A DNA stretch of 64,000 bases from Octopus sinensis. Taxonomy: Eukaryota. The notes under the pieces are model-generated. The model had not been told where the DNA came from. It worked only from the letters and a program-made list of their open reading frames with translations, and searched no databases. Location: contig NC_043000.1 in NCBI RefSeq assembly GCF_006345805.1, positions 20,894,001 to 20,958,000 on the forward strand, given 5' to 3'. Shown one piece after another: positions 1-30,133 of this stretch; within the stretch, counting starts at the first letter, position 1; every line of letters starts with the position of its first letter. The position numbers were made by a program, and so were the translations under genes.

Positions 1-774
1 TTTCCTATACTTATAATATTAAATTAAACTTCAAATTTCCACACTAAGGCACAGAGTATATGCCCTATGGTCGTAACTTCAACCATGTTCTTTCTGTTGT
101 GAGTTTGCTACCCAGGTATCGGTTATCTTTCGAATTATCCGTAATAAGATAATTCATTTATCTACTTAAAATATATATATATAGTGGTGGGGGTATGAGG
201 GAATGTACGTGGATATGCCTATATTTACGTGTCTAGGTACAACATTAAAATTGCATTCAGTGGTGAGGCTCCAGTTGAAGTTGTGGAGAGCGTTGAGTCA
301 TCCCTTGGGTACCATTACTCCCAGGTTCATTCTAACCCAGAATTGTAGTACTAGTTAGGGTCCCATCCATGGGTTAAATAGATTTCCCAGGGGTAGAGGA
401 GACTCTGATTTTTTAACAAATTCATGGGAAGAGGAAGCTCTTCTAGGAGAAAGACACTCTGACATAAAACTTCCCATCAAAATAGTACCAGTCATCTTAC
501 AATGCTTGTCACTGGAACCTCCTGTAGCAAATGAGAGAATGGCAAAAGTATTGTATAAGCTTTTGTCACTTAAATCCACAGATGTACATATGTCAATTAT
601 CATTTGATTTGTTTTGTCTATACGTATAAATTTGATATGGGCAATTCTTTCTTGTCTTGGGATTCACGGTCAAACGGTGGAATTGTACGAAAAATTACAC
701 AGGTGTGTAGAATGATCTGATGGTGTTGCTGGGCTTTGTATTTTTTCATAGCTCCCATGGTTTTATCTTCTATA

Positions 775-965
775 TTTTACTTATTTCAGTCATTAGACTG
801 TGGCCATGTTGGGGCACCACCCAGAAGAAGTTTTACTTGAGCGATTTGATCCCTAGTACTTATTTTTTAAGCCCGGTACTTATTCTCTCAGGCTCTTTTG
901 CTGAACCACCTAATTACAGGGACATAAGCACACCAACATCAGTTACCAGGTGGTGGTGGTGGCAG

Positions 966-998
<33 letters not shown>

Positions 999-1040
999 TA
1001 TGTACATACATACATACATACATACATACATACATACATA
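775..1040 (-). mobile_element. SINE family A, partial copy (3' half) with (CA)n(TACA)n microsatellite
   Basis: Matches the 3' half of the ~400-bp SINE repeated >15 times in the window (ttcagtcatt.gactgtggccatg...). Confidence 0.75.
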
Positions 1041-1092
1041 CATAGAGATTTTTAAATAAACTGAATAATGACATACATACATACATATGATG

Positions 1093-1686
1093 GGCTGAAA
1101 TTGAGTGCATGAAAACAGTGCAAGGGGCAATTGGACAGACTGCACTTGTAACACAAAAGCCCAAACTTATAATATACATTGTCATTCTCAGGCCTTATTT
1201 CAAAAATATTCCATTTACTTGTATTCTATAACATACCTTTTTGTTACTCTGGGTATAACTTGAATATAACAATTCAATCAATATTATTGTAAACTATAAT
1301 ACTATCGTTGATTGTTGATAGAGCGGCTAACTGGCTTCTGTGCTAGTGGCATATACAAGGCACCATTCACGTGTGATCGTTACCAGCGTCGCCTTACTGG
1401 CACTTGTGCCCCATGCTAGTAGGGTGTTAAGAGCACCATCCGAGCGTGATCATTGCCAGAGCGTCTAACTGGCTTCCATGCTGGTGGCACGTAAAAGGCA
1501 CCATTCGAGCGTGATCATTAGCAGTGTCACCTTACTGGCACGTGAAAAAACATTTGAGCAAGGTCGTTGCCAGTACTTGACTGGCCCCCATGCCAGTGGT
1601 ATGTAAAAGCAGCCACTACACTCTTGGAGTGGTTGGTGTTAGGAAGGGCATCCAGCTGTAGAAACTCTGCCAGATCAAGATTGGAG
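1093..1686. repeat. Inverted duplication, copy 1 (partner 9356-9949)
   Basis: 594 bp, reverse complement of 9356-9949, about 9 mismatches by manual alignment. Confidence 0.93.
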
Positions 1687-4218
1687 TTCAGTTTTCATCT
1701 ACCAAATTCACTCACAAAGGACTAGACTATGGTAAAAGGCACTTGCCCAAGGTGCCATACGGAGGGACTAAACCCAGAATTTTGTGGTTAGGAATCAAAT
1801 TCCTCACCACACTGCCATGCCTGCATCACCCATGTGAAAAACTATAAAAATTTGTTACATAATCTCTTTCTTACTCCACAGTTTATCTTTCTTAATCCTC
1901 AGCTAATCCTGCTCACCTACTTTAGGTCAACATGTTATCATTATTAATGAATGAAATATGTTGGGTTAACTTAAATAACATGAGTTAAATATATTGAATT
2001 ACCTAATATATTTAGTCCGGTAATATGTTGTGCAAAATAAACATCATTTGAGGAAATTATTGACCAAACCAATATCCAAACTGGCATTACTAGATTCTTT
2101 TAGGAATTTTGAGATTCCCCAAAGATAAATATTCAAAGAATAGAAACAGTGAAATCTCATCAACAGTTAGAAGCGGAATTCTGTTTTATATTAGCTTAGT
2201 AAATTAAAATGACATGAATTTCTAAGCAACTCTGTTTCTTTATATTATGTTGCTGAAGGCCAGATATACAATGTTTCATCCTGTTGATCACAGAATCAAT
2301 ACTTCCAAAATTGTTCTGAGTTGTAAATAAATACAATGGACAGGTACAACTCATTATTGAAAGCAGCTATGACACAAAATCATTGTCAGCATCATTTTAA
2401 CATCCATGTTTTCATTGCTTGCATGGATCAAACAGAATTTATTGAGACGGATTTTTCTATAGTTAGATGTCCTTCTGGTCACCAACTGCCACATTGTTCC
2501 CAAGTTGGGTAACATTTGCCAATGGCTGAACATGTTTTCATGGAAGGTGGGGAATGAATGGCACTGTTTGGAGGATGATGACACTAGTTTACATTTATTA
2601 CTCAATGTTAAGACAAGGACACCCATACCACACATACACACAAACACACATAAATATACATGATGGAAAATGACCTGGTGATGGTGCCACATAAAAAGCA
2701 CTGCTGATGGTGCAATGTAAAAAGCACCCAGTACATTCAGTAAAGTGGCTGGCATTAGGAAGGTCAGCCAGCTGCAGAGACCAACCCAAAACAAGCCTAG
2801 TGCTGCCCCTGGCCTAACCAGCTCCTGTTAAGCCATCCAACCCATGCCAGCTTAGAAAAAGAATGTTAAAGAATGATGGATTTCTTTCAGTTTCCATCTG
2901 TGAAATTCACTCACAAGGCCTTGGTCAACCCTGGGCTTTAGTAAACAACACTTGTTCAAAGTGGCATGCAGTGGAACTGAACTAGAAAGCATGTGGTTTT
3001 GGTTAGGAAGTGACCTTCTTAACTACACAACCATGCCTAACAACAGTATTTTTACCTAACAGAATTCATTCAAATTTTATGTGAAGAGATTTGCTGCTGA
3101 CTTAGATGCATAATGGGAATCTGTCGTCTTCAAATGGTTTATTTACAATGCAATGGGTTACAGTAATTTCTTACATCTTTTACATAAGAAAATGTCTCCG
3201 GGACAAAACCCTATTTTCATTTCAAAACAAAACTTTAGCCTAACAGGAAATTTGAGTGACAAATGAATAATCATCTCAGTTAATTATAGTTTTCCTTCGA
3301 CTGAAGGTGACTTACATTTTTCACCTTTATCATTATCAGTTCAAAACTCTATATCTTGAAATTATTTTTCACTGATTTGACAAGCAGATTAATTTTGCAT
3401 ATTTTTGAGATTATTGATTCAAATTTTTGAAAATAAATTAATAAAAAATTTTTAGATGCAATGTTATATTCATATTAATAAAGAATGAACAAAACTGATC
3501 GACTGAAATTCGATATAAATGTATCTCAGGGAATAACAGGATTCTTTAGTCTTGCTGGATATTAGGCAACCTCCCTAGTGCATGTGCCATGATAATGACA
3601 TGCTGTGCACTCGGTGCTTCGAATTCAGAATAGTATCCAAAGAAAGAAACTATGGCAAAAATGGAATATACCAAACCCATCTAGGAGGACAGTAACTCCA
3701 AATATGAATTGACTCAGATGATGATAAACACATCTAACCCATGCAGTATGGAAAAGTAGACGTAAAATGATTATGAAATTAGTATTGTTAGCAGAATTTT
3801 ATTGCTGACATCAAGGGTTATCAAGCAATTCCGTTTGTATTCCATCTTTTTCAACATTGTTTTCCTTTGATGTCCCAGCATAATTTTTCTCTTTGCTCTT
3901 CATTTACCATCACCAGTAGAAGTAATGTAAACATCTGTTGAGAAAAATCTACATCAAAAGTTATTTTGAAGCCTAAACTCTTAATTATGACCACAAAATC
4001 TTCATAGCTACCAGACTTAGTGGTTTTCAGCCTTCTCGATTATATAGAAAACTTGAGATCAAACAAAACAATTGCTAACACAAATTGCATGGAAAGTTTT
4101 AAAATTATTAGCACATTTCATATGGCACACTTTGCATGGTAAGTTGAAAAACCAAACTGTTTTAAAGTTAGAAAATTTAGGGAACTATTTACTTTGTTTT
4201 ACTGTTCATACTGTTCCA

Positions 4219-4617
4219 GCGCAGGAGTGGCTGTGTGGTAAGTAGCTTGCTTACCAACCACATGGTCCTGGGTTCAGTCCCACTGCGTGGCACTTTCGGC
4301 AAGTGTCTTCTACTATAGCCTCAGGTCAACCAAAGCCTTATGAGTGGATTTGGTGGACAGAAACTGAAAGAAGCTCGTCATACATGTGTACATGTATATA
4401 TATATGTGTGTGTGTCTGTGTTTGTCCCCCCCCCCCACAACATCGCTTGACAACCAATGGTGGTGTGTTTGCATCCCCATAACTTAGTGGTTCGGCAAAA
4501 GCGACTGATAGAATAAGTACTAGGCTTACAAAGAATAAGTGCTGGGGTCGATTCGCTCCACTAAAGGTGGTGCTCCAGCATGGCCACAGTCAAATGACTG
4601 AAACAAGTAAAAGAGTA
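4219..4617 (+). mobile_element. SINE family A (tRNA-like head, internal TA/CA microsatellite)
   Basis: gcgcaggagtggctgtgtggtaag head ... gactgaaacaagtaaaagagta tail; multi-copy in window. Confidence 0.9.
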
Positions 4618-5394
4618 TACTTGTATATAACAAAATTATGATGAACATCTTTTTAAGATGCTCAAACATAAGTATGAGCTTTCTAAAGCCCTAAATCATA
4701 TTTTTTTAAATCAACAGTACAGTTTCATAACCACTGATCCAAGTATTATCAAGCGAATTCAGGACAAAGTCTATATTACATGTCATGTTTTTTATTTGTT
4801 TACCTTGAATTGAGAAAGTGCTGAAATTTAGTCTTATAAAATATTTCTCCTTTCAATATTTCTATCAAAAACAGGAAAGTTTAAACGCAAATTAGGTGGC
4901 ATTATTTGAATAAATCTCTTTCTTTATTTAAAGTCTTCATGAATTTTTTAATGAAACCTGATTTATATTCTAACGTAAAAACAATGCATTGACCAAGGGC
5001 TCATTTATCATGTTTTACTAACTCCTAATTCTTTTAGCAATGTAGTTTTTTCTAGAATATCAAGAAGGAAATAAATACTCAAGTATGTCTGCTATAAGAA
5101 AACTTAATAAAATGGGTGCTAACATACTTGATGTAGAGAGCTAAGAATTTTAATTAATTAAAATTACACCTTTGGTGATAAGAACAAACCATCATTGAAA
5201 TGACAGTTAAGATCTAGAGGTTATCTCCCCTGCTTTTTTTATATGAATTATGCATTCAGTTACTAATCACCATATTTGCTCATGTATGTCACACCCCTAA
5301 TTTGGTGTTAAATCTTGCCACAAAATTTTTATCCCTTCATAATTTTAGCTTTGTTTCATATATGTCATAACCTGGTTTTCTCAGTAAAATCAAG

Positions 5395-5478
5395 TATTAA
5401 ATAGTGTGGTTTATGTATTAAATAGTGTGGTTTATGTATTAAATAGTGTGGTTTATATATTTAATAGTGTGGTTTATA
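5395..5478. repeat. 21-bp minisatellite, 4 units (tattaaatagtgtggtttatg)
   Basis: Four adjacent units, last two slightly diverged. Confidence 0.9.
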
Positions 5479-6593
5479 TATGAGCAAATACAGTTGTTCG
5501 TCCTGTAAAGTGTTGATATTCTGCATCATTATCCTAATGAAGAATTTTAGTATAACGGCTTTTGTTCTAAAAACATTGGCAAAGAGTGAAAGTCCTTGCA
5601 AGGAATCTAGTTATATTTCTAACAATTAATCTTTATTAATATTGATTTTATTATGACATAAATCTTCTTCAGATGGACTCAATGACCAGTTGAAACTGAA
5701 GGAAATTTATTTCCATTGAACTGAAAGAAATTTATTGCCATTAAGTTCTCAATAAATAATCATTATTCAGTTGACAATTAATTATATTCCATTACATCTA
5801 AAAGAACATTGATGCCAAAACTGAAATAAATTATTCTCTGCTCTAACAAATTCAACACGTATTTCCCATTATTTTTGTATAAGAACAAAGCTTCTATCCA
5901 AGCTGCCAATGCATATTTTTTTTTTATTCCCTCAGCATTAATCTCAGTTACTCAGCTGAGCCTTTTGTCAAATGGAAATTTTTTGCAAAGTCATCCAAAT
6001 ATATTATTTTGGTTTTTCTACAAGCAAGAAGTGAGTTAGTAAAGTCTTAATTCCTAATAAAAGTGTCTTTAATTGAAAACAAATATCTCTAACCTTAGGA
6101 CAGTCTGGAACCATACAAAACATGATCTGGTATCTAATGAGAGTAAAGATTTATGTTTAATTTTATGTCATTTTCTTATTCATTAACAGCAGAAAATTAC
6201 ATTTAAAATACTGTTGGAGGGATAAACAAATACTGTTACAGGAATACACAAAATTATTTCCACAGATAATTTATTTTCTGAATTTAAAAGAAAGTTATAG
6301 TAAAACAGCAAAAACCAATATTTTGCTTTTAGGTGTATAAAGCAATATCTGTTGATAACATTGTGTGGTATGAGAATTATATTTCTTAAGACTCAACTAT
6401 TTCTTTAACCTATTTTAGATTGTAAGAAAAGAGGATGTTAATTTCGTTTTGGGATTTGGTTTGCAAGATTCTTTATGTGAGTTCGAGTGCTGAAGCATAT
6501 TCTGTTGTGTCTGGGGAGAGTCATTTTCTTTTTGTGCCTTATAATTTAACACACTCACCGGTAAAATTTTCACTTTTTTCTTATTTTTATTTT

Positions 6594-6869
6594 CCTTGTG
6601 AGTGGATTTGATAGATGGAAACTAAAAGATGCCCATCGAATATATGTATATATATATGTGTGTGTGTGTCTGTGTTTGTCCCCCAACATTGCTTGACAAT
6701 TGATGCTGGTGTGTTAACGTCCCTGTAACTTAGCGGTTCAGAAAAAGAGACCAATAGAATACATACTAGGCTTACAAAGAATAAGTCCTGGGGGTCGATT
6801 TCTGTGACTAAAGGCGGTGCTCCAGCATGGCCACAATCAAATGACTGAAACAAGTAAAAGAGTAAAGAG
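6594..6869 (+). mobile_element. SINE family A, 5'-truncated
   Basis: Aligns with the 3' two-thirds of other copies. Confidence 0.85.
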
Positions 6870-7147
6870 AATATTATTATTGAAAAATAAATTGAAACAA
6901 ATTAATTGAACTGAAACAAATTGCTGGTTATATTTATAAATTACCACATTTCTGTTAAATTTTAACAGAAATATAGTTACAAAAGGGTTAAATAGCATCT
7001 TTTCATAAGTCTGATTTCAACACCTGCCGAAATGAACCATTTGTAACAACTTTGAGGCATTTAGTTCTGATGGTCTACAGTTTCTATCAACCAATGATGT
7101 AACATCTAGTCACAGACACACAAATGTAATTATACAAGGGGAAATAG

Positions 7148-7540
7148 TAGTTGTGATACCTGTGCCGCTGGCACATAAAAAGCACCATCCGAACGTGGCT
7201 GATGCCAGCGCCGCCCTGACTGGCTTCTGTGCCGGTGGCACATAAAAAGCACCATCCGAACATGGCCGTTGCCAGCACCGCCTTGGCTGGCTTCCGTGCC
7301 GGTGGCACGTTAAAAGCTCCAACCGATCGTGGCCGATGCCGGACCCCCCTGGCACCTGTGCAGGTGGCACGTAAAAAGCACCCACTACACTCGCGGAGTG
7401 GTTGGCGTTAGGAAGGGCATCCAGCTATAGAAACTCTGCCAGATTAGACTGGAGCCTGGTGCAGCCCCTGGCTTCCCAGACCCCGGTCGAACCGTCCAAC
7501 CCGTGCTAGCGGGGAAAACGGACGTTAAACGATGATGATG
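7148..7540 (+). mobile_element. RTE LINE 3'-end fragment with ~58-bp tandem units
   Basis: Ends ggacgttaaacgatgatgatg like the RTE tail at 61394; gtgccggtggcac units. Confidence 0.88.
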
Positions 7541-7745
7541 CTAAAAAGTTCTTGGCTTTGGGTAAAAAAAATGCAGGAGGATCAGTTAATTGTGATTTTA
7601 TTCATCATATTCCCCTCTCAGATTCACACAGTTATTGCAGCAGTCCTTCAGTTTTTCTAACCCCTGTAAAAGAGCTTGGAAGATTGGGCCTCCAACCAGG
7701 CCTTTTGTGATACTCTTAAAGCCAGAAACTTTTCAGTGCCCCCTT
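7540..7745 (-). mobile_element. Mariner-derived MITE
   Basis: Imperfect TIRs (gctaaaaagttcttggcttt / rc actgaaaagtttctggcttt); minus strand reads GLEKLKDCCNNCVNLRGEYDE*, resembling a mariner transposase C-terminus. Confidence 0.6.
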
Positions 7746-8060
7746 TTATAAATATACACTCATGCAAGTACACACACATTTTTAAAAAATCTGAAACATA
7801 GATGGGGATTACTAGTTTAAAAGACATTTTAACAACATTAATCTAGACAAAAGTACAACTAATAAAACTTGAAGAGGTTTCTCTTAACTTTTTAGAAGAA
7901 ATATAAGGCGTAGGATCTGCAAAGAAATTCTTTATATTTATGCAACCAGTTCACTTACTGATCTTATTGGGTTTATCTCTTCTGCTTGTTATTTTTATCT
8001 TTAAAACACCTTGAAAGTAAGATAGTAGATTACCTTGGCTGATCCAAGATTTTCAACACA

Positions 8061-8469
8061 ATAGGCACATGAGTGGCTGTGTGGCAAGTAGCTTACTTAC
8101 AAACCACATGGTTCTGGGTTCAGTCCCACTGCGTTGCACTTTCGGCAAGTGTCTTGTACTATAGCCTCGGGCCGACCAAAGCTTTGTGAGTGGATTTGGT
8201 AGACGGAAACTGAAAGAAGCCCGTCATATATATGTATACATATATATATGTATGTGTGTGTATATGTTTGTGTGTCTGTTTGTCCTCCCGACATCGCTTA
8301 ACAACTGATGCTGGTGTGTTTACGTCCCTGTAATTTAGCGGTTCGGCAAAAGAGACCAATAGAATAAGTACTAGGCTTACAAAGAATAAGTCCTGGGGTT
8401 GATTTTCTCAACTAAAGGCGGTGCTCCAGCATGGCCACAGTCAAATGACTGAAACAAGTAAAGAGAGTA
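8061..8469 (+). mobile_element. SINE family A
   Basis: Full-length match to family consensus seen in window. Confidence 0.9.
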
Positions 8470-8611
8470 ATACATATGTGAAACTCAACTGTTTGTAATA
8501 TTTAACATACAGAAAACTCTTCCGAGTTATTTTTCCTTCAGCCTTATAATGTTGGTTCACCATTAGAATTATTTTGATATAAAACTGATATATTTTATCA
8601 TTTTCTTTTAG

Positions 8612-9151
8612 GTTCGTCAACATAAAAATTCCTCAGGGAGCCAGAAAGGAAGGGGTACGTGTACGCTGGTGGCAGCCTGAGAATGATGGCAAACTTCTCC
8701 GGGATTGGGCATTGGATGACATTGTAATTGGTGGCAACATGGTGAATCCTGTAAACGTAACAAGTAATTTTACAACCGATTTTGTTGAACATGAATGGTT
8801 GACCACCAACAATCTAGAAATTGGAGAATATTGTGGGCAACCTGAATCAGCTGTAGCAAAACCAGTCGCTGGTGAAGGGGCCAAACTGACAACCCGTGAT
8901 GTCAAAATAGAAGATGATTATATACTTCAATTCTCAATCAATGTTGGATGTGGGGCACCATGGAATAGCTCCATTTCTCCAGTTCATCTGCAATATTCTG
9001 TAAACTATGGTAAAAACTGGTATTATGTTACTCCCCAATGTATGACTAAGGACCCTCAATGTAACACAGAGGCTTCAGTCAAGACTGTTTATTACACAAC
9101 TTTTGGCTGGCAACGAGTTATTATCCCTCTTACAGGACATGTTGTATCAAG
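8612..9151 (+). CDS. RELN: Reelin exon A (540 nt, phase 2-2)
   Basis: tttag acceptor, ag|gtaagc donor; FVNIKIP...RVRWWQP...DWALDDIVIGG...HLQYSVNYGKNW. Confidence 0.95.
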
Positions 9152-12100
9152 GTAAGCATTATGTTGATATCCTCATTTTGACTTATTTGAATTTAAATAT
9201 TATATAAAATATAAGAAATTGTTCAAGAATGCAAAATTCCATTGCCATGCTGAGGATATAGTATTCATCATCATCATCGTTTAACGTCTGCTTTCCATGC
9301 TAGCATGGGTTGGACGATTTGACTGAGGGCTGGCAAACCAAATGGCCACGCCAGGCTCCAATCTTGATTTGGCAGAGTTTCTACAGCTGGATGCCCTTCC
9401 TAACACCAACCACTCCAAGAGTGTAGTGGCTGCTTTTACATACCACTGGCATGGGGGCCAGTCAAGTACTGGCAACGACCTTGCTCAAATGTTTTTTCAC
9501 GTGCCAGTAAGGTGACACTGCTAATGATCATGCTCGAATGGTGCCTTTTACGTGCCACCAGTACGGAAGCCAGTTAGACGCTCTGGCAATGATCACGCTC
9601 AGATGGTGCTCTTAACACTCTACTAGCACGGGGCACAAGTGCCAGTAAGGCGACGCTGGTAACGATCACATGTGAATGGTGCCTTGTATATGCCACTAGC
9701 ACAGAAGCCAGTTAGCCGCTCTGTCAACAATCAACGATAGTATTATAGTTTACAATAATATTGATTGAATTGTTATATTCAAGTTATACCCAGAGTAACA
9801 AAAAGGTATGTTATAGAATACAAGTAAATGGAATATTTTTGAAATAAGGCCTGAGAATGACAATGTATATTATAAGTTTGGGCTTTTGTGTTACAAGTGC
9901 AGTCTGTCCAATTGCCCCTTGCACTGTTTTCATGCACTCAATTTCAGCCAAGGGATTGATTCTGAAACAGCGACATCTTAAGGCATGAGCACGCTGGGCA
10001 ATTGCTCTAGGAGCCCCACAGGTCTAGGGATCCAATTATGATCTATTGTTATGGTTTGCTGTCAATAAATAAATGCTATTGGGCCCATTGCATTGATTTG
10101 CTTGGTGGGGTTTATAATGATGCTAATATGGTTCTGATCTAAACTCATGTGATTCAGAAATAAACTACTGAATCACTCCACTATACACTCACAAATCTAT
10201 ACGCATGAAGCAAATATTTTGCATTAAGACTACTTTAGACTTTGATCAAGATATCTTTGAACTTTGTTTTCTAATTTTCTTTCTGTAGTGCCACACGTTT
10301 CCAGTGGTTCCAGATCATGCCTGGTCAACAGGAAGACTCCAAAGATGGCAAGGAATGGGCCATTCGAGATATCTATATTGGCAAAGCATGTGCGGATATG
10401 TGTCATGGCCATGGGTTTTGTGACAATGGCCAGTGTCTCTGTGATGAAGGATACATGTGGGCTACATGTCACCCAATGGGATACCTTTATCAGCCAGTAA
10501 ATATTGATTTGCTCTTATTTTCTGTTATTTTATTTATCATTTTTCTTTTATTTACCATTTCCCTGTCAATAGTTTTACTATATCTTCAAACTTATGAATT
10601 TAAAAAGTTTTTATAACAACTAGCAGTATCGCCCAGCATTGCTCGGGTTTGTTTCGACTCTTTAGAATTGGAATTTTTGAAATGTAAAAATTTTGCATTA
10701 TGTAGCTTGTTATTCTCTTTAAGTGAACATTTTTTTGGTTGAAATACATCGAAAAATGGCGACACAACAGTCAAAAAATCATAAAAAATAGGGATTTTCA
10801 TAGAAAAAAAGCACTTTTTTGATGTAAATAATTTTTGATGTTAACATAGTCCGATTTGAATTTTATCTTCTATGGAATGAAGAGCAAGCCTTCTTCTGTC
10901 ATACTTTTAATTTTGGTCAACTTGTGCTGCAGGGTCTCAGAGGAGATAGTGTTAGTTGAAGGCTACTAAACCTTCCACACACAGACAACTTCAGCTTTAT
11001 AAATATAGATTTAGAGAAGTTTGAGTCTTTTTTTTTTAACCCTGTAATGCCCATTGTCAATAGTTCTTGATACTTCAGATACTATGTTCTTATAGGAAGG
11101 ACACAATTCTGCTGCAGCCATAATGTTATAGCTAATTGTCATAAATGGATCTGTTGTGTACAGAAGCTACATTACACTTCTAATATTTGCTAGATATAAA
11201 TTCAGAGATGTAAAGCTATTTTATGTTCATATGACATTAGTAAGTGGAAAGACAACACAGATGACCCTCTTTTTCGGGCCTCTGAGCCTGGGATCTGGAT
11301 CAAATGCTGAATGCTTACAATGGAAGTAGACCCTACTTATAGCAAACCACAGGCCAAGTGGGGTTATTAAACTAGACAGTCAGATTAAGTCTACCAACCC
11401 AAAATAGGAATGGTACCTTCAGTAAACTTCCATGCAGTTTCCACCAACCAAATTTCACCTACATTACTTTAGTCTACTCGGAACTGTGGTAAAAGACACT
11501 GCCTAATATACTCTGCAAGTAAGATTGAACCTGGAGCCACAGAGCTGAATGCCTGCAACCAATATTACACCAACAGTGGTTTGGTATTTATACAGGAAGT
11601 GGTAAAATTATAGAAAATTTTATTACTAATTTTTTGTTTTAATGAGCCAAAAGCAAAGATGTTGCACCTTTACCATTCCTAAGCATCACAGTCATCATCA
11701 TCTTCATTTAATGCCTGTTTTCCATGCTAACATATGTTGGACAGTTTGACAGGAGCTGCTAAGCTGGAGGGTTGCGCCAGGTTCCAGTCGTCTGTTTTGG
11801 CATGGTCTCTACAGCTAGATGCCCTTCCTAATACCAACCGCTTTACAGCATGTAACTAAGTGCTTTTTACATAGTGCCAGCGTGGGTGCTTTTTATGTGG
11901 TACCATCTTTTGAAATCAATGAGGAACAACAAATTCAATATTCAACTTCAGTATTTGTAGGTTATTGTCAACAAAGACAGTATGAACAAAAAGGGAAAGG
12001 AATCCAGAGAAACGTGGTTCTTTGAAGGATTGCGAGAAATACTTGTGCTTGGTTTTGAAGCTCAAGATATAGAATTGGTGAATGGAGAAGTTATAAGTAC

Positions 12101-15061
12101 ATCAGGTGGTCTTGGGCAGAGATTGTATGCTACAGACAATGTAAAGAATCCTCTTCAGTTTTGTTAGGAGAATGACAAGTCTTTGGGTGATTGCAGTGAT
12201 AGTGAGGGGTGGGGGAGAGATATTATGTGTCTGTGAGTAAACCTATTCTAATCAACTGAATAGCTTTAGGGGAATTAAGGTCAATCCAGGATGTTTGTAA
12301 GGGTACATCAGCAGCACTAGAGGCTGAAATAATTGCATGTCTGGGCTTGAATATAGACAGCACTTCAGATTTGAAGAGGATCTCTTTTACTTGTTTCAGT
12401 CATTTGACTGCGGTCATGCTGGAGCACCACCTTTAGTCGAGCAAATTGACTCTAGGACTTATTCTTTGGAAGCCTAGTACTTATTCTATCAGTCTTTTGC
12501 CGAACCGCTAAGTTACAGGGACATAAACACACCAGCATCGGTTGTCAAGCAATGTTGGGGGAACAAACACAGACACACAAACATATACACACACACATAT
12601 ATATGCATATATACGACAAGCTTCTTTCAGCTTTCATCTACCAAATCCACTCACAAGGCTTTGGTCTGACCGAGGCTATAGTAGAAGACACTTGCCCAAG
12701 GTGCCACGCAGTGGGACTGAACCTGGAACCATGTGGTTGGTAAGCAATCTACTTACCACACAGCTACTCTTATGCCTAGGATCTATAAACAATTGAAGTG
12801 ATTTTCCAGTTTGGAAGAAGCCTAAACACTGGAATGATATTTTGGCAGAATTATGGATGTGTAATTGCTATAAAAGCTCATCAGGGATTATGAAACCAGT
12901 ATTTTGGAGAGTTTCAGGCTTTTAACTATCTGTTGTTCATGCATAGAAAGGGTGCAGTACAAGACTATTTACTTGATAAGTCCAGCAGTAATGTCTTCAT
13001 GCCACAGAAAGTGATTATTTTCAGAGACCAAGCTGCTTTCACTGTGACTGTTGGAAGTCTTTTTTACAATAGTCCTGTATTAGTTAGGGCCCTTCATCAG
13101 AGATCTTGTTTTATTAAAGATATGTCTTTTTAGTATTTTTGCAATTATTTATTGAACAAATGTATATATTTGTTTCTTTATGTTGTATACTGATGCTAGC
13201 CAACTTTCAATTCCTGTTTAAAGACTCAGCTTAAAGACACATTCAATGAGCCAAGTATAAATAGAAGTAACTGGTTCCTTGTGCAAGGAGCAGCTATCTA
13301 CAATGCCTGTACAGAGCTCGTTGATGGAACAGCATTGGTGTTCTCAGGCAAAGGCATGCGATTGGCTGAAACCTGGGATTTGGATCTCAGAGATGCTATG
13401 TAGGTCATTTTTTTCTTTTACTTATACTAACTTATTCTTGTATTCTTATATTCCTTAAAAGCACTTATGGTTTGATATATTTATTTGAAGCATTAAAAAT
13501 AAGAATAACAGCAGAGATGTTTATATTCAGCTTTCAAATTGAATTTAGCAATACCTATTTTTGAGTATTATAACTGAGTATTTTATTTTGTTAAAGTATA
13601 GCAACATAATACCTGCTGTCATGTAATATAATGAAAATTACATAATGAAAATTACATCACAAAAGAGAAAGTTGAAGAAAGATAACATTTTAAAGTATTT
13701 AAAAATACAATACTAGTTTATATAGAGGTATTATTAACATGATTAAATTTAGACATCTGTGTGTAATACATGTTGAAAAGGAATTTAAAAATACTGGAAA
13801 ATACTACAGACATCTTGTGTAACAATTTTATACTCACAGTTAAGTGCTAATTAGTCTTTTTTTAGAGAATAAATACTTCAGAGATGCTAATTACCAGATA
13901 TAAGGGCATAATAACTCTGAAACATGTCTGAGGTTGTCTCTTTTCATCATCATCATCATCATTTAGCGTCCATTGTCCATGCTAGCATGGGTTGGACAGT
14001 TTGCCTGGGCTATCATGCAGGAAGGCTGCACCAGACTCCAGTCTGATTTGGCATGGTTTCCCATAGCTGGATGCCCTTCCTAACGCCAACCACTCTGAGA
14101 GTGTAATGGGTGCTTTTACATGCCACCAGCATGGGTACCATTTGCATGACATCAGGGTGCGTTTACATGCCACTGGCACAGGTGCCAATTTCAAAGACAC
14201 TGGAATATGCCATGACTGCAATTTTGCTCGGCTTGATGGGTCTTCTTCTCAAGCACAACATAATGCCAAAGGTCTCAGTCATTGCCTCCATGAGGCCCAA
14301 CACTCAAAAGGAACTCAGTACTTTGCCTCTGTGAGGCCCAACACTTTTATTTGCTATAATAATTAAAATAATGTCAGTCAATGTTTAATATTTTTCCTGG
14401 CTGTATAATTATTTCTACTTAACATTGTAAGTATATTAGCACTAATGCAACTGTTAATTACTATTTATTTGGAATTTTCCAAATAAACGTATAAGTTTTG
14501 AAAATTATTATCTACAAAATACAAATGTATGATCTTTATTTAAAAAATTCATAATACCAGATTCATAATGTATACTGCCATAATTGGAGGCACTCAGCAA
14601 AGTGGTGAATGTGTGGAACCCAGTTCTAGAGACCAAAGTGTCATACTACAATATTCTATCAATGGTGGTAAGTCTCTTTTGTTATTCCTTTTACTCCAGG
14701 TACCAAATTATTAAGGAACAAATTTACCAACTTTATAATTTTTTCCAGATATTGTAAAGTTCAGATAAAAATATTTCAATGTCATAAGCTTCCTCCAGAC
14801 ACTGTGAAATTAAGATCGCATAGCCTTTCTCTTTTTTTCTCTTTCTCTTTTCTCTTTTACTTGTTTCAGTCATTTGATTGTGGTCATGCTGGAGCACCGC
14901 CTTCAATTGAGCAACTCGACTCAGGACTTATTCTTTTGTAAGCCCAGTACTTATTTTATCGGTCTCTTTTGCCGAACCACTAAGTAACGGGGACATAAAC
15001 ACACCAGCATCGGTTGTCAAGCAATGCTAGGTGGACAAACACAGACACACAAACACACACA

Positions 15062-15109
<48 letters not shown>

Positions 15110-18100
15110 CATATATACGACAGGATTCTTTTCAGTTTCCATCTATCAAATCCGCTCACAAGGCTTTGGTCAGCCCGAGGCTATAGTAGAAGACACTTGC
15201 CCAAGGTGCCACGCAGTGGGACTGAACCCGGAACCATGTGGTTGGTAAGCAAGCTACTTACCACACAGCCACTCCTGTGTATTCAAACCTTGTAGCAACC
15301 ATCATGTTGTTCATTTAACCATGCTACAGTATCACAGTATCAACCAGACCATTAAATGCTGTTAAACACCACTGGTCACAATACACTTCTAATTCTGTCT
15401 TAATTGCACCTTTCTTTTCCCTCTTGGCCCAAACTGCTAGACCAAATCATCTTCCCATCATTATGGGGGCCCTTCCAAGCAGCCTTTCCTGATCTTTTGG
15501 ATATCACTCAGCAACTACATGGGTCCACCTGTTGTCTGTGAGCCTTACAATTCAGTAGAACTTGTGCTTTCAGTATTCTGCAACCACATCATTCACTCCA
15601 CTTTTTCCTTTAATTATCTCATTTCAAATATGGTCTCATAATGATATTCCTAGCATAGATCTTTTCCATAGCCCCTTGTGTCATTGCCAATTAATATTGC
15701 ATCCTCTTCGTAATGGCCCACATCTCACTTGCATATAAGAGCACAGGTAGAATGGTGCTACTGAAGAGAAGACAGGCACATATGGTATCATCTAGCTTTA
15801 TTTTGGGCACATCATTTATTAACTTAGATGCCTTCTATCCCTTATTCTTTTTGAGATTTCAGGATCCATATCTCAGTACACATTAACCATGAAATATTAC
15901 TAAATTTTTAAGTCTACTTAACAGAAAATATTTACCAATTTTACTTTGTAATTGAATTATTATCATTTGGAAGGATATATAACTTCAAAGAAATCATATT
16001 CTCTTATATTTTTACATGCAAATAAAAATCAATTTCAAAATCTATATCCCTCCTTCTAATACATAAAATGGCATGTAAAACAGTCAGAAATATATACTAA
16101 TATCAATAGCTTGTAGTTTACTCTTTTACTTGTTTCAGTCATTTGACTGCAGCCATGCTGGAGCACCACCTTTAGTCAAGCAAATCAACCTCAGGACTTA
16201 TTCTTTGTAAGCCTAGTACTTATTCTATCGGTCTCTTTTGCCGAACTGCTAAGTTACAGGGATGTAAACACAGCAGCATTGGTTGTCAAGCGATGTTGGG
16301 GGGACAAACACACACACACACACAAACATACACACACAAACATACACACACACACACATATATACATATATACGATGGGCTTCTTTCAGTTTCCATCTAC
16401 CAAATCCACTCACAAGGCTTTGGTCAGCCTGAGGCTATAGCAGAAGACACTTGCCCAAGGTACCACACAGTGGGACTGAACCCAGAACCATGTGGTTGAT
16501 ATACAAGCTACTTACCACACAGCCACTCCTACACCTATAAAATAGTTTTGACCATTGTTTTCATAATTGTCAATGGCATCAGACTTTTTGTCTGTATTTC
16601 TTGCCTCCCATTTGCTATTCCCAAAACCATTTCCTTATCTGCCACTCATGCAACATGTTTCATATAGCTTATCTCCTATCTCTGAATGATTTTCAAAAGT
16701 TTTACAGTTTTTGTCATTTTGTACCCTCTGATATTGATAAAATAAAATACATCTATCCTCATTTGTTATGGGATTTGGGTACAAAAAAGTGATAAATGAA
16801 TCAGTGATAAATGAGGCTATATTGGGATTGAAATATATATATGTCTATAATACATCTTAAATGTGAATGGTATTATAATGCTAAATCTTAGAGATTTCAG
16901 TTTTTTCACTGTAACTGTAAGATCATTCCAAGTGGATGTTGCAATATGGTACTAGTTTCAGACCACCAAAGTGATTCCATAATTCTATATGCAAAGTTAA
17001 TTAATAAAATCTTAAAATCACCATCTGTGTACCATACAAAATTCCTACACACCATTAGAAGACATGAAGCTGTAGAACTGTCTGAAATAAAATCTCTTTA
17101 TAGGCTTGCTGTGTCAAAAGCACAAATTTATATCAGGAGGAGACAAACATCATTGCTGCAGTGAATCACAACCGAGACAAATGCATTTCTCCTTTGTTGA
17201 GACTTGTCAATGCAGTGCTTTGGTATTTTGTGGCAGCTTGCTGGGTTAGACAATTCCACAGTTTCATGCCTTCTAATAGAGTGTATGCTTTTAGTATTAT
17301 AGACAGATGATCAAGGTGGCGAACTGGCAGAGATGTTAGCACGCCAGGCTATTACGCCCATCGCTACGTTCTGAGTTCAAATTCTGCCGAGGTTGACTTT
17401 GCCTTTCATCCTTTCGGGGTCGATAAATTAAGTACCAGTTATGCACTGGGGCCGATGTAATCGACTTAATCCATTTGTCTGTCCTTGTTTGTCCCCTCAG
17501 TGTTTAGCCCCTTGTGGGTAATAAAGAAACAAATATTATAAACAGATGATGATTTAACTTTAATGCTGTCTCAATTGAGTTTACTAAATAATATCTTATT
17601 TTTTTTACATTTTTTTCTTCCAGGTATCATTTGGCACACAATTTATACTCTTGACTACAAATATTACCAACATCCAAAGACAGACTATCTAAAGTTGCCC
17701 TTCCCTGCTAGAACAGGCAGTACGCGTATTCGATGGTGGCAGCCCATGCCTCTTGATGACTTAGAAGTATTTCCCAGCTGGGCTCTGGACAATGTTTATA
17801 TTGGGGGATCAGAAATTAATCCTAGCTTACTTTGGTTAAATTTTACTCAAGGTATGCATGAACTATGGTCTAACTGGGAGTTTTCTCCACGCGGTCAAGT
17901 CAGCAAAGATTTCTGTTACAAAACTGAACATTCTCTAACGTGGAACAATGACAAAAGACAGAAAAGTTTGACTACAAATCAACTTATTGTTCAGGAAGAT
18001 TCCATACTCCAATTTAAGGTACAATATTTTATATCTTGTTTTATTTTATTTTATTGTATTTTTTTATTTAGACAAAAGACTGTTCTTAAGACCTGATAAA

Positions 18101-21100
18101 ATGGAAATGATATAGATTTTCTAAACTTGTTTTAATATTAAAACATTTAATCACTGTTTATATATGTGTGTAGTGATTATGTGTTTTCTTCCAGTAAATG
18201 CAAAAAAAAAAAGAGAGAAAATTGGAACTTTTCACAGAATTTCATTGATTCTGTCAAATAAGTTGGGCTTTTTTGATATTTTCTAGACAACTCCACCATT
18301 TCAAGACTTCTACATAAACTTTTTGTTAGATGATAGAATATACTAATGTCTAAGGCTAGGAGAGAACTACAGTTATGATAAAAGGTTGTTGGTGCCACAG
18401 TAGTTTGGAGAAGATATTCTTTTATGTAACTTTAGATAAAACACTTAAATCATCTTTGTAGCTGAGTTCTACAACAGGGCATAATATTCTATTCACAGAA
18501 ATCAAACATTATAAAGTTTGTGTGTTTATACCAGGCAAATATTCATATAAGAGGTTCCATCAATATTCCTTATTCAAAAGATATAGGTCTATTCATTTTC
18601 CATAGTGACTAAATTTGGCATTTCCATCTGAGCAGTCATCCTCACAGAGAGCTTTTTTGTTACTACATAGTAACTTTCTGTAAAGTATAAACAACATTGT
18701 GTTACATAAAAGATCAGAATACAGTGTTATTATTTGATATTCATAGAGCAAAGCAAAAGAAATATTCCTTTACCCAATAATAATAATAATAATAATCCTT
18801 GATGCTATTGTTTCTCCAGATTGCTATTGGGTGTAATAATAAATTCAACAGCTGCATTCCAAATAGCCCTGTACATCTTGAATTCAGGAAGAATCCAAGC
18901 ATTGGGAAATGGGAACACCTATTACCCATTTGCTTGCCAGATAACAATGTCTTGATGAGCTGCCGGCCTCACATACACCACAAAGCAAGTATAATGCATG
19001 CTGATGAATATCCAACTTGGACAAGGTACACTTTGAAATTACCAGACAAGGCACATTCAAGGTAAAATACAATTTTATTAAGACACATTAACCCTCTAAC
19101 ATTCAGATTATTCTGCCACATATAATGCTTATTTACTCACATTGTTTTGAATTCATTATGCATTAGCTTGTAGCTTTGAGATTTTGATGATGAGACTTAT
19201 TTCTAGAATGATATTATAGGATAGGTGAGATAGACCAGATATGATCAGTTATAACAGTGCTTCTCAAACTATCTAATGTGGTGAAGTGGCAGTTTTTTTT
19301 TTCCAGTGTTGCCAGGGACCAGTAATATTTTTTAGTAATATTAATTTACACCAGAAACAATATATATATAATGAATATAATAAAAGTTGACAATTTTTTA
19401 ATCTTGTATTTATTTAGTAAACAAATAGGCGTAGAAGTGGCTGTGTGGTAAGTAGCTTGCTTACGAACCGCATGGTTCCGGGTTCAGTCCCACTGCATGG
19501 CACCTTGGGCAAATGTCTTCTACTATAGCCCCAGGCCGACCAAACCCTTGTGAGCGGACTTGGTAGAGGGAAACTGAAAGAAGCCCATCGCATATATGTG
19601 TGTGTGTGTGTGTATGTTTGTGTGTCTATGTTTGTCCCCCCAACATCACTTGACAACCAATGCTGCTGTGTTTACATCCCTGTAACTTAGCAGTTCGGCA
19701 AAAGAGACCGATAGAATAAGTACTAGGCTTACAAAGAATAAGTCCTGGAGTCGATTTGCTCGACTAAAGGCGGTGCTCCAGCCTGGCCACAGTCAAATGA
19801 CTGAAACAAGTGAAAGAGTAAAATAATACAATATTACATAAGCATTTCGTGTTTCTTTCTTTTCTGGAAACTCGCCGTATACTGGCAGCTGATAGCTTGC
19901 GGACCGGCACTAGTCTGCTGACCACCACTTTGAGTAGCACTGAGTTTGAACATTAAACAGGTAGAATATTTGGACCAGATATGGCTGGTTTCAATGTTAA
20001 AGTGTCAAAAAGATTTTACTGTATTTAATAAGAATTTTAACCATATCAAGATCCATATACATTTAAAGTTATTCATCTTAGCATTACCAATATTAGCTTA
20101 TACGAGGCCTACTTGCTATTAACCCTATCATTACTATATTTCTGTTAAAAATACATTAGTTTTATGACAAGTAACACTCTGGTTATTGAAATATTGCCTA
20201 AGCATCAAGCTTTATCACTCATTTTCCAATTTGTCTTATTTCCCATTTTATGTGTAATTTAAACCAATAATCGATAATGGCATTTGCATTAAATTGAGAA
20301 GAGGACTGAGCTTTATAACGACATATTATAATCTGTTTCAGCTCCACACAAATACGCTGGGTCCAGAAACATGTGGAAGGAGCAGTATCACCACCATGGG
20401 CCCTTGATGAGATTTACATTGGTGAGACATGTCCAGATATGTGCAATGGCCGCGGAGATTGTAGAAAGGGTCGGTGCTTCTGTGAACCCGGAACAGTTGG
20501 TCAGTTCAATGTTGCTTTAATTTAGTGTACAAGCCATTTTGGCACAACCATTTTGGTGCTGCCTATTTGGCTTTGCTAATTCAATGCTGACTTATTTGAC
20601 ATCAGACATTTTAGTGTTTCCTTCATTCTCTTTGTCACTCATTTTTTCTCTCTCTCTCTCTCCCTCCTTCCCTCTCTCCCCCTACATCTCTCTTTCCTTC
20701 TCTCTTTCTCTCTCTCACTTTATATATTTCACACACATATGTGTGTGAATGTTTGCTTCCAGTGCTAAAAAGTACTATCAAAACAGGTGCATCCAAACAG
20801 CCATACTTAATCATCTCGTTCTATTTAACTTACTATCTTTTCCTTATCTTTTCTTTTTTTTTTTTATTATTTGTTTCAGAGAAACACAGTAGCCTTTCAA
20901 ACTTAGAACACAACCTGTTTTTGGTTTTTATCTGTCTTTCTCATAGAAAGACAGACACAATATGACTTCCTATTCCTAAAAAAATCCTACTTTTTAGAAG
21001 CACAGAACAATCGATTGTGTTCAAATGTAGCAAAACTGAATAGTTAAGGTATCAAGTTTGATATTTTTCTGTTCTCAGTTCAATATTTCATTATCATCAA

Positions 21101-29100: not shown

Positions 29101-29283
29101 TCAGAGAGTTTATCACAGCAAAAGATGAAATTTTGTTTAAAGACGGAATATATGACTTTGAGTAATGTTGGATGAAGGTCATAAATGAACATGGATTATA
29201 CTTTGATTAAATAAATCAATTCTCTAACACTTCTGAAACATTTTATTGTTAACTTTCAAATACGACATTTCGTGTGTGACAAC

Positions 29284-29476: not shown

Positions 29477-29517
<41 letters not shown>

Positions 29518-30133
29518 TAGCAGTATCGCCTGGCGTTGCTCGGGTTTGTTTCGACCCTTTAGAATTGGAATTTTTGAAATGTAAAAATTTTGCATTATGT
29601 AGCTTGTTATTCTCTTTAAGTGAACATTTTTCTGGTTGAAATACACCGAAAAATGGCGACACAGCAGTCAAAAAATCGTAAAAAATAGGGATTTTCATAG
29701 TAAAAAAGCACCTTTTTGATGTAAATAATTTTTGGTGTTAACATGGTCCGATTTGAATTTTTCTTCTCTGAAATGAAGAGCAAGCTTTCTTCTATCATAC
29801 TCTCAATTTTGGTCAACTTGCACCACAGGGTCTCGGAGGAAATAGTGTTAGTTGAAGAATACCAAACCTGCCATACACAGATAACTTCAGCTTTATATAT
29901 ATAGATATATTGATAAAAATGGTAAGATAACAGAAGAAAGAAAAAGACCTCGATATTATGCAAAATAGAGGAATTTATCTGTAAATGTAATATGAGACAA
30001 TTATTCGGTAACCATGATAAAACTCCGAGTTTCGGATGCTGAGGTGGAAATCCATGCTGCCATCTCTTCAGTTATCCGGTCATCGGAAAAACGCTATAAA
30101 AAAAAAATATATATATATATACACGCACACATT

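What the first reader, a model, noticed from the sequence alone, without database searches (positions are those of the whole stretch)
1093..9949. Very recent 594-bp inverted duplication bracketing a frame-preserving 540-nt reelin exon
1093-1686 is the reverse complement of 9356-9949. The ~225-bp AT-rich non-RTE part is identical. The ~9 mismatches I count are all transitions in the RTE part, and at least five are at CpG. Copy 1 carries sequence 5' of the RTE fragment and lacks its tail, so this looks like a DNA-level duplication rather than retrotransposition. The pair flanks exon A (8612-9151; 540 nt, phase 2-2), with copy 2 only ~200 nt from the donor. Inference: the pre-mRNA can form a ~600-bp, ~98% duplex that loops out this exon. 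That geometry favours back-splicing, in-frame skipping, or ADAR hyper-editing, which is abundant in coleoid neurons. It may be a lineage-specific switch making a reelin lacking about one sub-repeat.
Basis: partly seen in the sequence, partly recalled or inferred. Interest (0 to 1): 0.7.

Follow-up and report, generated by a model that had tools for sequence, protein, structure and literature searches.

The report
Recent inverted intron copy flanking reelin exon
A 594-base piece of the intron just after one reelin exon was recently copied, backwards, into the intron before that exon, apparently as a by-product of DNA-break repair; this leaves a near-perfect inverted repeat around the exon, and any effect on the RNA is plausible but untested.

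Summary
Window 1093-1686 is the reverse complement of 9356-9949: 594 nt, no gaps, 9 mismatches, all transitions, 5 at CpG. It is by far the best repeat pair in the 64-kb window.

The pair brackets a conserved 540-nt, phase 2-2 reelin exon (8612-9151).

Origin and direction are now resolved:
- **Copy 2 is the donor.** Its non-LINE part (9737-9949) is ancestral intron, found in place in a related species' contigs. Its LINE-tail fragment (9266-9736) has an 8-bp target-site duplication and its 3' tail.
- **Copy 1 is the derived copy.** It sits inside an older SINE (775-1092 + 1687-1825), with 4-nt microhomology, about 3 nt of target loss, no target duplication and no LINE tail.

This is a templated insertion made by break repair or template switching, not retrotransposition, a dispersed repeat or a likely mis-assembly.

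In the sense pre-mRNA the arms could form a 594-bp duplex (585 Watson-Crick pairs, 6 G·U, 3 A·C; -1166 kcal/mol). ADAR hyper-editing of the arms is the most likely consequence.

Back-splicing, exon skipping or a "switch" cannot be tested here. Exon A already lay between other inverted repeats, has strong splice sites and is under purifying selection. It also straddles two sub-repeats rather than encoding one.

The parts
1093..1686 (+). Copy 1, the derived templated insertion. 1093-1305 is copied intron sequence. 1306-1686 is the copied LINE 3'-region fragment, LINE sense on the + strand. 1093-1096 (GGCT) is junction microhomology.
   Evidence: alignment to copy 2. (it interrupts a SINE, with no target-site duplication and no tail).
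9356..9949 (-). Copy 2, the donor segment. 9737-9949 is ancestral intron. 9356-9736 is part of a resident LINE-tail fragment.
   Evidence: a relative's contig runs uninterrupted from the intron part across the 9949/9950 boundary to the next exon; the LINE continues beyond 9356 into its tail.
9266..9736 (-). 5'-truncated LINE 3'-region fragment with its 3' tail and a (TGA)n microsatellite at 9266-9280. It is flanked by the 8-bp target-site duplication ATAGTATT (9258-9265 and 9737-9744).
   Evidence: target-site duplication. (at least 20 diverged family copies in the window). (absent at the orthologous site of the relative).
775..1092 (+). 5' part of an older SINE, including its internal (CA)n/(CATA)n microsatellite. 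It is cut off by the copy 1 insertion.
   Evidence: it matches about 17 other SINE copies in the window; junction alignment.
1687..1825 (+). 3' part of the same SINE. It resumes at TTCAGTTT, about 3 nt (TCT) after the break point in the family consensus.
   Evidence: in every other copy the two halves are contiguous.
8612..9151 (+). Reelin exon A: 540 nt, phase 2-2. It encodes the end of a sub-repeat B and most of the following sub-repeat A.
10289..10496 (+). Next reelin exon (end of sub-repeat A plus the EGF module). Its frame continues from exon A through AG|T.
7178..7540 (+). Older copy of the same LINE 3' region, 1.07 kb upstream of exon A. It is inverted relative to 9269-9613 (72% identity). 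This pair flanked exon A before the new one arose.
   Evidence: (I7-I9).
8071..8470 (-). SINE 140 nt upstream of exon A, absent in the relative. It is inverted relative to SINEs at 12382-12778 and 16118-16528 (86% identity). These are competing pairs that would enclose exon A plus downstream exons.

Best explanation
SHOWN. The intron downstream of reelin exon A contains ancestral AT-rich sequence (9737-9949). A 5'-truncated LINE 3' fragment (9266-9736, minus strand) inserted next to it by ordinary retrotransposition, leaving an 8-bp target-site duplication. Later, a 590-594-nt stretch spanning that intron/LINE junction was copied in inverted orientation into a break inside an old SINE, 7.7 kb upstream in the preceding intron. 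The donor stayed intact. The junctions show 4 nt of microhomology (GGCT) on one side and a blunt join on the other. About 3 nt of target were lost. There is no target-site duplication and no LINE tail.

INFERRED mechanism of origin. This is a templated insertion made during double-strand-break repair or replication template switching (class-2 templated-sequence-insertion or MMBIR/FoSTeS type). Whether the template was nearby DNA or the gene's own transcript cannot be told. Since then both copies have accumulated ordinary substitutions, mainly CpG decay: 1.5% overall, against about 12.5% intron divergence from the relative.

INFERRED consequence. In the sense pre-mRNA the arms can form a 594-bp duplex (585 Watson-Crick pairs, 6 G·U, 3 A·C). 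The most likely result is promiscuous ADAR hyper-editing of the two intronic arms wherever the gene is expressed. Any effect on back-splicing or skipping of exon A is a possible but secondary and probably small side effect. The element is most likely a neutral or slightly deleterious young structural variant, not an evolved switch.
For: - Arms and mismatch spectrum.
- The intron-derived part is unique in the window, while the LINE part has at least 20 diverged copies (69-90% identity).
- The pair is the outlier among all window repeats.
- The flanks of copy 1 are the two contiguous halves of one SINE family. The consensus reads ...GGGCT TCT TTCAG..., against GGGCT|insert|TTCAG here.
- Contigs from a related species (L004-L006) carry the intron-derived part in place, continuous across the 9949/9950 arm boundary to the EGF exon.
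- The relative lacks the LINE fragment: L001 joined to L004 gives a site without it. The LINE fragment in the window has the ATAGTATT target-site duplication.
- Comparison with other family copies gives at least 5 derived changes in copy 2 and 1-3 in copy 1, with 5 of 16 CpG sites hit.
- Duplex composition and energy (-1166 kcal/mol against -318 for the arms folded alone).
- Literature: class-2 templated insertions have no target-site duplication and show microhomology and microdeletion (PMC5110952). Octopus shows exceptionally strong hyper-editing tied to long near-perfect dsRNA (PMC5625713). Octopus circRNA levels are low (PMC9699675).
Against: - Only one assembly was available and no reads, so mis-assembly is argued against but not excluded.
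- The relative is known only from 1.1-1.7-kb contigs of unnamed species. Its site lacking the LINE also lacks about 18 nt that include the target sequence, so a precise empty site is not shown.
- The copy 1 site could not be examined in any relative.
- The 3-nt target loss is inferred from a family consensus, not from the pre-insertion allele.
- The arms are 7.7 kb apart. Each arm has nearer, weaker partners, so how often the long duplex forms in vivo is unknown.
- No RNA evidence of editing, skipping or circularisation was accessible.
Confidence: 0.75

Rival explanations
1. The new inverted pair is a lineage-specific switch that loops out exon A and produces a circular RNA and/or an in-frame exon-skipped reelin isoform at biologically meaningful levels.
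For: - The arms lie in the two introns flanking a single symmetric exon.
- The duplex is by far the most stable available.
- Copy 2 is only 205 nt from the donor.
- Flanking reverse-complementary matches are an established driver of back-splicing (Ivanov et al. 2015, cited in PMC9699675).
Against: - No RNA data.
- Exon A was already bracketed by other inverted pairs, so the geometry is not new.
- The splice sites are strong and conserved, and the exon is under purifying selection.
- The skipped product would fuse two sub-repeats about 12 residues out of register.
- Octopus circRNAs are reported as low overall, and ADAR antagonises circRNA biogenesis (PMC9699675).
- The event is very young and may not even be fixed.
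Confidence: 0.1
2. Assembly artefact: one arm is a spurious duplicated or inverted piece introduced by the assembler.
For: - Only one assembly was seen.
- Inverted duplications are a known class of long-read artefact.
- The window's own species is absent from the searchable collections.
Against: - The copies differ by 9 substitutions and no indels. The changes are CpG-biased, with derived states in both copies. That is an evolutionary signature, not an error signature.
- Copy 1 has clean junctions inside a SINE, with microhomology.
- The arms are 7.7 kb apart and are not an adjacent palindrome.
Confidence: 0.05
3. Retrotransposition: copy 1 is a LINE-mediated retrocopy, for example a 5'-transduction from a transcript that starts in the intron and runs through the LINE fragment.
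For: - The segment contains the LINE 3' region, and an RT-encoding LINE of the same family is in the window.
- LINEs of the RTE class are reported active in octopus (PMC9115989).
Against: - Copy 1 lacks the last ~90 nt and the microsatellite tail of the LINE, which is where target-primed reverse transcription must start.
- There is no target-site duplication and about 3 nt of target were lost.
Confidence: 0.03
4. Both arms are ordinary members of a dispersed composite repeat family, and their closeness is a coincidence.
For: - 381 of the 594 nt belong to a very abundant repeat.
- Genome-wide copy number could not be checked.
Against: - The 213-nt intron part has no other copy in the 64 kb and is orthologous single-locus intron in a relative.
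- The arms are 98.5% identical, while no other family pair exceeds about 94%.
Confidence: 0.02

Closest known systems
Class-2 templated sequence insertions (TSI/TSIP) from double-strand-break repair (Onozawa and Aplan; PMC5110952)
   Same: A few-hundred-bp patch was copied from an intact donor elsewhere. There is no target-site duplication and no poly(A) or LINE tail. The junctions show microhomology and a microdeletion.
   Different: Here the donor is only 7.7 kb away in the same gene and the copy is inverted. Human class-2 TSIs are usually from distant loci and are thought to be RNA-derived. RNA or DNA templating cannot be told here.
MMBIR/FoSTeS template-switch insertions (e.g. PMC8421209)
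   Same: The donor is nearby, the orientation is inverted, and there is microhomology at a junction.
   Different: Typical MMBIR templated insertions catalogued in genomes are tens of bp. Only one junction here shows microhomology.
Inverted Alu or other repeat pairs flanking circRNA exons and serving as ADAR hyper-editing substrates
   Same: Reverse-complementary repeats lie in both flanking introns of an exon with canonical splice sites, within one transcript.
   Different: Those pairs are normally two independent insertions of a dispersed repeat, 70-90% identical. This pair is a donor and its direct copy, 98.5% identical, and a third of it is unique intron sequence. No back-splice or editing data exist here.
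Drosophila hairpin-RNA (hpRNA) loci born by inverted duplication
   Same: A recent inverted duplication yields a long near-perfect hairpin that carries sequence of a repeated target.
   Different: hpRNA arms are close together and produce endo-siRNAs. Here the loop is 7.7 kb and contains an exon, and no small-RNA evidence exists.
Inverted-repeat-mediated inversions (e.g. F8 int1h/int22h, from general knowledge)
   Same: Near-identical inverted repeats flank coding sequence within a gene. Homologous recombination between them would invert exon A.
   Different: The arms here are shorter (0.6 kb). No inverted allele has been observed.

Membership tests
Templated insertion by break repair or template switching (class-2 TSI / MMBIR type) | The donor sequence is retained intact at its original locus. 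| tested here: met
   Copy 2 is continuous with its ancestral flank and with the LINE tail.
Templated insertion by break repair or template switching (class-2 TSI / MMBIR type) | No target-site duplication and no poly(A) or retroelement 3' tail at the insertion. | tested here: met
   Junction alignment against 8 SINE copies. The LINE tail is present only at copy 2.
Templated insertion by break repair or template switching (class-2 TSI / MMBIR type) | End-joining signatures: microhomology and/or microdeletion at the junctions. | tested here: met
   GGCT is shared by the SINE consensus, copy 1 and the donor. About 3 nt (TCT) of the SINE consensus are missing. The deletion is inferred from a consensus.
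Templated insertion by break repair or template switching (class-2 TSI / MMBIR type) | Nature of the template (RNA or DNA), and presence/absence polymorphism. | not testable with these tools
   No reads, no other individuals, and the window's species is not in the collections.
LINE retrotransposition (target-primed reverse transcription), as the origin of copy 1 | The copy includes the element's 3' end and is flanked by a target-site duplication. | tested here: not met
   Copy 1 ends about 90 nt before the LINE 3' end and has no target-site duplication. The donor fragment at 9266-9736 does meet both features.
   Only shown: the repeat is the region 3' of an RVT_1 ORF at 62019-63991. RTE elements are known in octopus (PMC9115989).
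Reelin | Reelin sub-repeat / EGF / sub-repeat architecture with sequence similarity to vertebrate reelin. | tested here: met
   Pfam PF21471 on three exons plus an EGF exon. Mouse reelin R5-6 (3A7Q) at E 7e-89. Further repeats lie downstream on the + strand.
Inverted-repeat-driven circRNA exon | Reverse-complementary sequences in both flanking introns, and canonical splice sites. | tested here: met
Inverted-repeat-driven circRNA exon | Back-splice junction reads (9151 to 8612) that are RNase-R resistant. | not testable with these tools
   No transcriptome of this species could be reached.
ADAR hyper-editing substrate | A long, near-perfect intramolecular duplex within one transcription unit. 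| tested here: met
   594 bp with 3 A·C mismatches in the sense RNA, -1166 kcal/mol. Both arms lie in introns of the same + strand gene.
ADAR hyper-editing substrate | Clustered A-to-G mismatches in RNA reads. | not testable with these tools
   No RNA data. The genomic differences between the arms show no sense-strand A-to-G bias.
Dispersed repeat family (whole 594-nt unit) | Multiple copies sharing the full unit, including the intron/LINE junction. | tested here: not met
   Only the two copies exist in the 64 kb. The intron part is single-locus and orthologous in a relative. This could not be tested genome-wide.

The most novel reading that the evidence does not exclude
The young inverted pair has a real RNA-level function or cost specific to this lineage. 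One possibility is that it drives circularisation or skipping of a receptor-binding-region exon of reelin in neurons. Another is that its 594-bp hairpin is diced into small RNAs against the LINE family it carries, making it a nascent hpRNA-like locus inside a neurodevelopmental gene.
Probability: 0.07. Interest if true: 0.55.

Novelty: new member of a known kind. Interest (0 to 1): 0.3.

Why it matters
This is a clean, datable natural example of how a long, nearly perfect intronic inverted repeat arises in one step by repair-templated insertion, rather than from two independent transposon insertions. Donor, target, junctions and polarity are all resolved. Such events may help explain why octopus-like genomes are so rich in long near-perfect dsRNA, the substrate of their heavy hyper-editing. 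The locus also offers a natural with/without comparison, if the insertion is polymorphic or absent in sister species, for testing how much a single strong flanking duplex changes editing, back-splicing and skipping of a conserved exon. By itself it is most likely a neutral or mildly harmful structural variant.

Tried and rejected
1. Exact look-ups of ten window ORFs found nothing. These included ORFs spanning each arm junction and ORFs inside the arms. The window's species is therefore not in the protein/contig collection, and no independent assembly, copy-number estimate or transcript could be obtained.
2. Homology searches with exon A and with the EGF exon returned only ORF-style fragments from genomic contigs. 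No spliced transcripts or annotated isoforms appeared, so exon skipping could not be checked. Cluster look-ups gave no names or accessions.
3. Literature searches for the SRA/ENA accessions of the relatives found nothing.
4. The distant relative L003 has only 2.3 kb upstream of exon A. It has no inverted repeats of 60 nt or more and nothing alignable outside the exons. It was uninformative for the arms.
5. Rfam and tRNA scans of 1-12000 found nothing.
It was replaced by tblastn with paralogous exons and by a local HMM over all stop-free segments.
7. I considered an RNA-editing footprint in the DNA, that is, copy 1 derived from an edited transcript. I rejected it: polarised changes are mostly G-to-A or C-to-T in copy 2 and CpG decay, with no sense-strand A-to-G excess.
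8. I considered the arms as terminal inverted repeats of an 8.9-kb transposon. I rejected it: the interior holds a conserved, in-order reelin exon, and one arm is ancestral intron.


Full report
**1. Observation**

The repeat finder reports arms 1093-1686 and 9356-9949 as a 594-nt inverted pair with 7669 nt between them. A direct comparison gives 9 mismatches and no gaps, 98.5% identity. All 9 are transitions, and 5 lie at CpG dinucleotides (1371, 1413, 1441, 1478, 1511). Identity collapses immediately outside both ends.

The first ~226 nt of copy 1 are identical to copy 2 and AT-rich (GC 32%). The remainder is 51% GC.

A megablast of the window against itself shows this pair is the outlier of the whole 64 kb. 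Every other repeat pair is 94% identical or less over 392 bp or less. Chance is not an issue for a match of this size.

**2. The exon**

Window 8612-9151 is bounded by ...ttttcttttag| and |gtaagc. It is open only in frame offset 1 and is 540 nt long. Both flanking introns are therefore phase 2, and removing the exon keeps the frame.

The next exon starts at 10289. AG|T completes a Ser codon, and the exon runs to 10496.

Evidence that this is reelin:
- Pfam finds Reelin_subrepeat-B in exon A (E 8e-25) and in exons near 17.6 and 18.8 kb, and EGF in the 10.3-kb exon.
- Exon A plus the EGF exon match the mouse reelin R5-6 crystal-structure chain (3A7Q) at E 7e-89.

That alignment also shows what the exon encodes. 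Its first ~40 residues are the end of a sub-repeat B (...RWWQP...WALDDIVIGG). Its remaining ~140 residues are the start of the next sub-repeat A. The exon therefore straddles a domain boundary rather than encoding one sub-repeat.

No reelin-like coding segment is detectable on the + strand in 1-8588, either by tblastn with paralogous exons or by a local profile HMM that recovers all the known exons. Within the window, the pair brackets exon A alone.

**3. What the arms are made of**

The GC-rich part of the arm has at least 20 diverged relatives in the window (69-90% identity). The AT-rich part has none other than its partner.

The repeated part is the region immediately 3' of a reverse-transcriptase ORF of a LINE at 62019-63991 on the minus strand. 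The clade (RTE) was not tested here. RTE LINEs are documented in octopus (PMC9115989).

At copy 2 the LINE sequence continues beyond the arm (9355 down to 9266) into its 3' end and a (TGA)n tail. The whole fragment, 9266-9736, is flanked by an 8-bp direct repeat ATAGTATT at 9258-9265 and 9737-9744. The LINE fragment at copy 2 is therefore an ordinary 5'-truncated retrotransposition. The true partition of the arm is 213 nt of intron (9737-9949 = 1093-1305) plus 381 nt of LINE (9356-9736 = 1306-1686).

**4. Which copy is the original**

Three independent lines agree that copy 2 is the donor.

- **Copy 1 interrupts a SINE.** The flanks of copy 1 (775-1092 and 1687-1825) are the two halves of one SINE family, and in about 15 other copies in the window the halves are contiguous. 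Aligned to eight of them, the family reads ...CGACGGGCT-TCT-TTCAGTTTCC.... Here it reads ...GATGGGCT|[insert]|TTCAGTTTTC.... Copy 1 is therefore an insertion into a pre-existing SINE.
- **The LINE is complete only at copy 2.** Only copy 2 is continuous with the rest of the LINE fragment and its tail.
- **A related species has the intron part in place.** Homology searches with exon A and the EGF exon recovered short genomic contigs from a related species. These are Logan assemblies of runs SRR11869384/90/91/94: exon A is 96% identical, unique intron sequence is about 87% identical, and the splice sites are identical. Contig L004 aligns to window 9745-10182 without interruption across the 9949/9950 arm boundary and continues to the EGF exon. 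The intron-derived part of the arm is therefore ancestral sequence at the copy 2 locus.

Joining the end of L001 to the start of L004 gives the relative's version of this intron. It lacks the LINE fragment, although it also lacks about 18 nt around the target. It carries an unrelated repeat insertion with an 11-bp target-site duplication, GATAATATTGA.

The order of events is therefore: ancestral intron, then LINE insertion after the split from this relative, then duplication.

**5. How copy 1 was made**

- **Left junction.** The four bases GGCT are shared by the SINE consensus, copy 1 and the donor (the donor reads ...CCCTTGGCTGAAATT). This is 4 nt of microhomology.
- **Right junction.** The join is blunt: donor ...GATTGGAG|CCTGG against copy 1 ...GATTGGAG|TTCAG.
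- **Target.** About 3 nt (TCT) of the SINE consensus are missing, and there is no target-site duplication.
- **Insert.** It lacks the LINE's last ~90 nt and its tail, which is where target-primed reverse transcription would have had to begin.

These features exclude canonical retrotransposition, including 5' transduction. They match templated insertion during break repair or template switching. The literature describes class-2 templated sequence insertions with exactly these junction features (PMC5110952) and MMBIR-type templated insertions from nearby sequence (PMC8421209).

The donor's closeness (7.7 kb, same gene) and the inverted orientation fit either a replication template switch or a patch copied from the gene's own nascent transcript. 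Sequence alone cannot separate these two.

**6. Age and mutation pattern**

The arms differ at 1.5% of sites. Unique intron sequence differs by about 12-13% between the window and the relative, with transitions to transversions about 1.3:1. The duplication is thus roughly a tenth as old as that split.

Five of the 16 CpG positions differ, against 4 of about 560 other positions. Using other family copies as an outgroup, at least 5 changes are derived in copy 2 and 1-3 in copy 1. Independent decay in both copies, dominated by CpG transitions and with no indels, is what real post-duplication evolution looks like. It is not what an assembler artefact looks like.

CpG density explains why all differences fall in the LINE part: the intron part has almost no CpG. 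The four non-CpG changes alone are not significantly clustered. There is no sense-strand A-to-G excess that would suggest copying from an edited RNA.

**7. What it could do**

In the sense transcript the 9 differences become 6 G·U wobbles and only 3 A·C mismatches. The duplex is therefore 591/594 paired. Its predicted energy is -1166 kcal/mol, against -318 for the arms folded separately.

This is the strongest pairing option for either arm, but it is not the only one that encloses exon A:

| Pair | Identity | Duplex energy (kcal/mol) | What it would enclose |
|---|---|---|---|
| 1093-1686 / 9356-9949 (new pair) | 98.5% | -1166 | exon A |
| 7178-7540 / 9269-9613 (older LINE copy) | 72% | -449 | exon A |
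| 8071-8470 / 12382-12778 (SINE) | 86% | -602 | exon A + EGF exon |
| 8071-8470 / 16118-16528 (SINE) | 86% | -627 | exon A + EGF exon + the 13.3-kb exon |

What is new is the quality of the duplex.

Published work reports that octopus has an exceptionally high hyper-editing signal tied to long near-perfect dsRNA (PMC5625713). It also reports that most octopus editing is intronic or in 3' UTRs, while circRNAs are low overall, consistent with ADAR opposing circularisation (PMC9699675). I therefore rank hyper-editing of the arms as the likely consequence, and back-splicing or skipping as possible but unproven.

Several points argue against a useful skipped isoform:
- The exon has strong, conserved splice sites.
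- It keeps the same 540-nt length in the relative.
- ORFs of similar length (176-182 aa) exist in more distant species.
- It shows 16 synonymous against 4 conservative codon differences.
- Skipping would fuse two sub-repeats about 12 residues out of register.

That would break the gene. This rests on general knowledge of inverted-repeat-mediated inversions and was not tested.

**8. Limits**

- The window's species is absent from the collections. No reads, other individuals, genome-wide copy number or transcripts were available.
- The relatives' species names could not be found, so the 'coleoid' attribution is unverified by tools.
- The copy 1 site could not be examined in any relative.
- Rfam and tRNA scans of the region were empty.

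**9. Verdict**

The feature is a new member of known kinds: a templated insertion, and a flanking inverted repeat.

Noticed in passing
window 62019-63991 (-) and 61174-61891: A LINE with a long reverse-transcriptase ORF (573 aa, Pfam RVT_1, running off the window end) plus a short C-terminal ORF. It is followed by a 3' region built of ~67-nt tandem units. This is the family that supplied the 'RTE part' of the arms and many fragments across the window.
   Followed up: partly
window 8059-8467; L001 318-324: A ~400-bp SINE 140 nt upstream of exon A is absent from the related species' contig, so it is a lineage-specific insertion. It forms 86%-identical inverted pairs with SINEs at 12382-12778 and 16118-16528.
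   Followed up: partly
window 10619-11010 and 29516-29906; L004 902-914: A 392-bp direct repeat pair, 91.8% identical. The copy at 10.6-11.0 kb, just after the EGF exon, is missing from the relative's contig, so it is another recent insertion in this reelin intron.
   Followed up: no
L001 1069-1107 and L004 1-44 (site equivalent to window ~9754-9764): The relative carries its own repeat insertion in the same short intron, flanked by an 11-bp target-site duplication GATAATATTGA. This intron has been hit independently in two lineages.
   Followed up: partly
window 1306-1686 / 9356-9736: 5 of 16 CpG sites differ between the arms, against 4 of about 560 other sites. This very high CpG:non-CpG ratio suggests germline methylation of this intronic LINE fragment. 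The numbers are small.
   Followed up: partly
window 28749-29165 (+) and 53976-54377 (+): ORFs that look like remnants of mariner/Tc1-type transposases (for example ...HPPYSPDISPTDYHLF...). This rests on recognition by eye and was not tested.
   Followed up: no
window 5394-5498: A short tandem array of a 21-nt unit (GTATTAAATAGTGTGGTTTAT), about 4-5 copies, in the intron between the arms.
   Followed up: no
window 17602-18021, 18799-19065, 20340-20498, 32821-32961: Further reelin exons on the + strand: a sub-repeat end and start, the rest of a sub-repeat, a second EGF, and another RWWQP-type sub-repeat end. The gene spans at least 8.6-33 kb of the window. The best PDB match places exon A at the repeat 5/6 boundary of vertebrate reelin, the receptor-binding region. 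Orthology of the repeat number was not established.
   Followed up: partly
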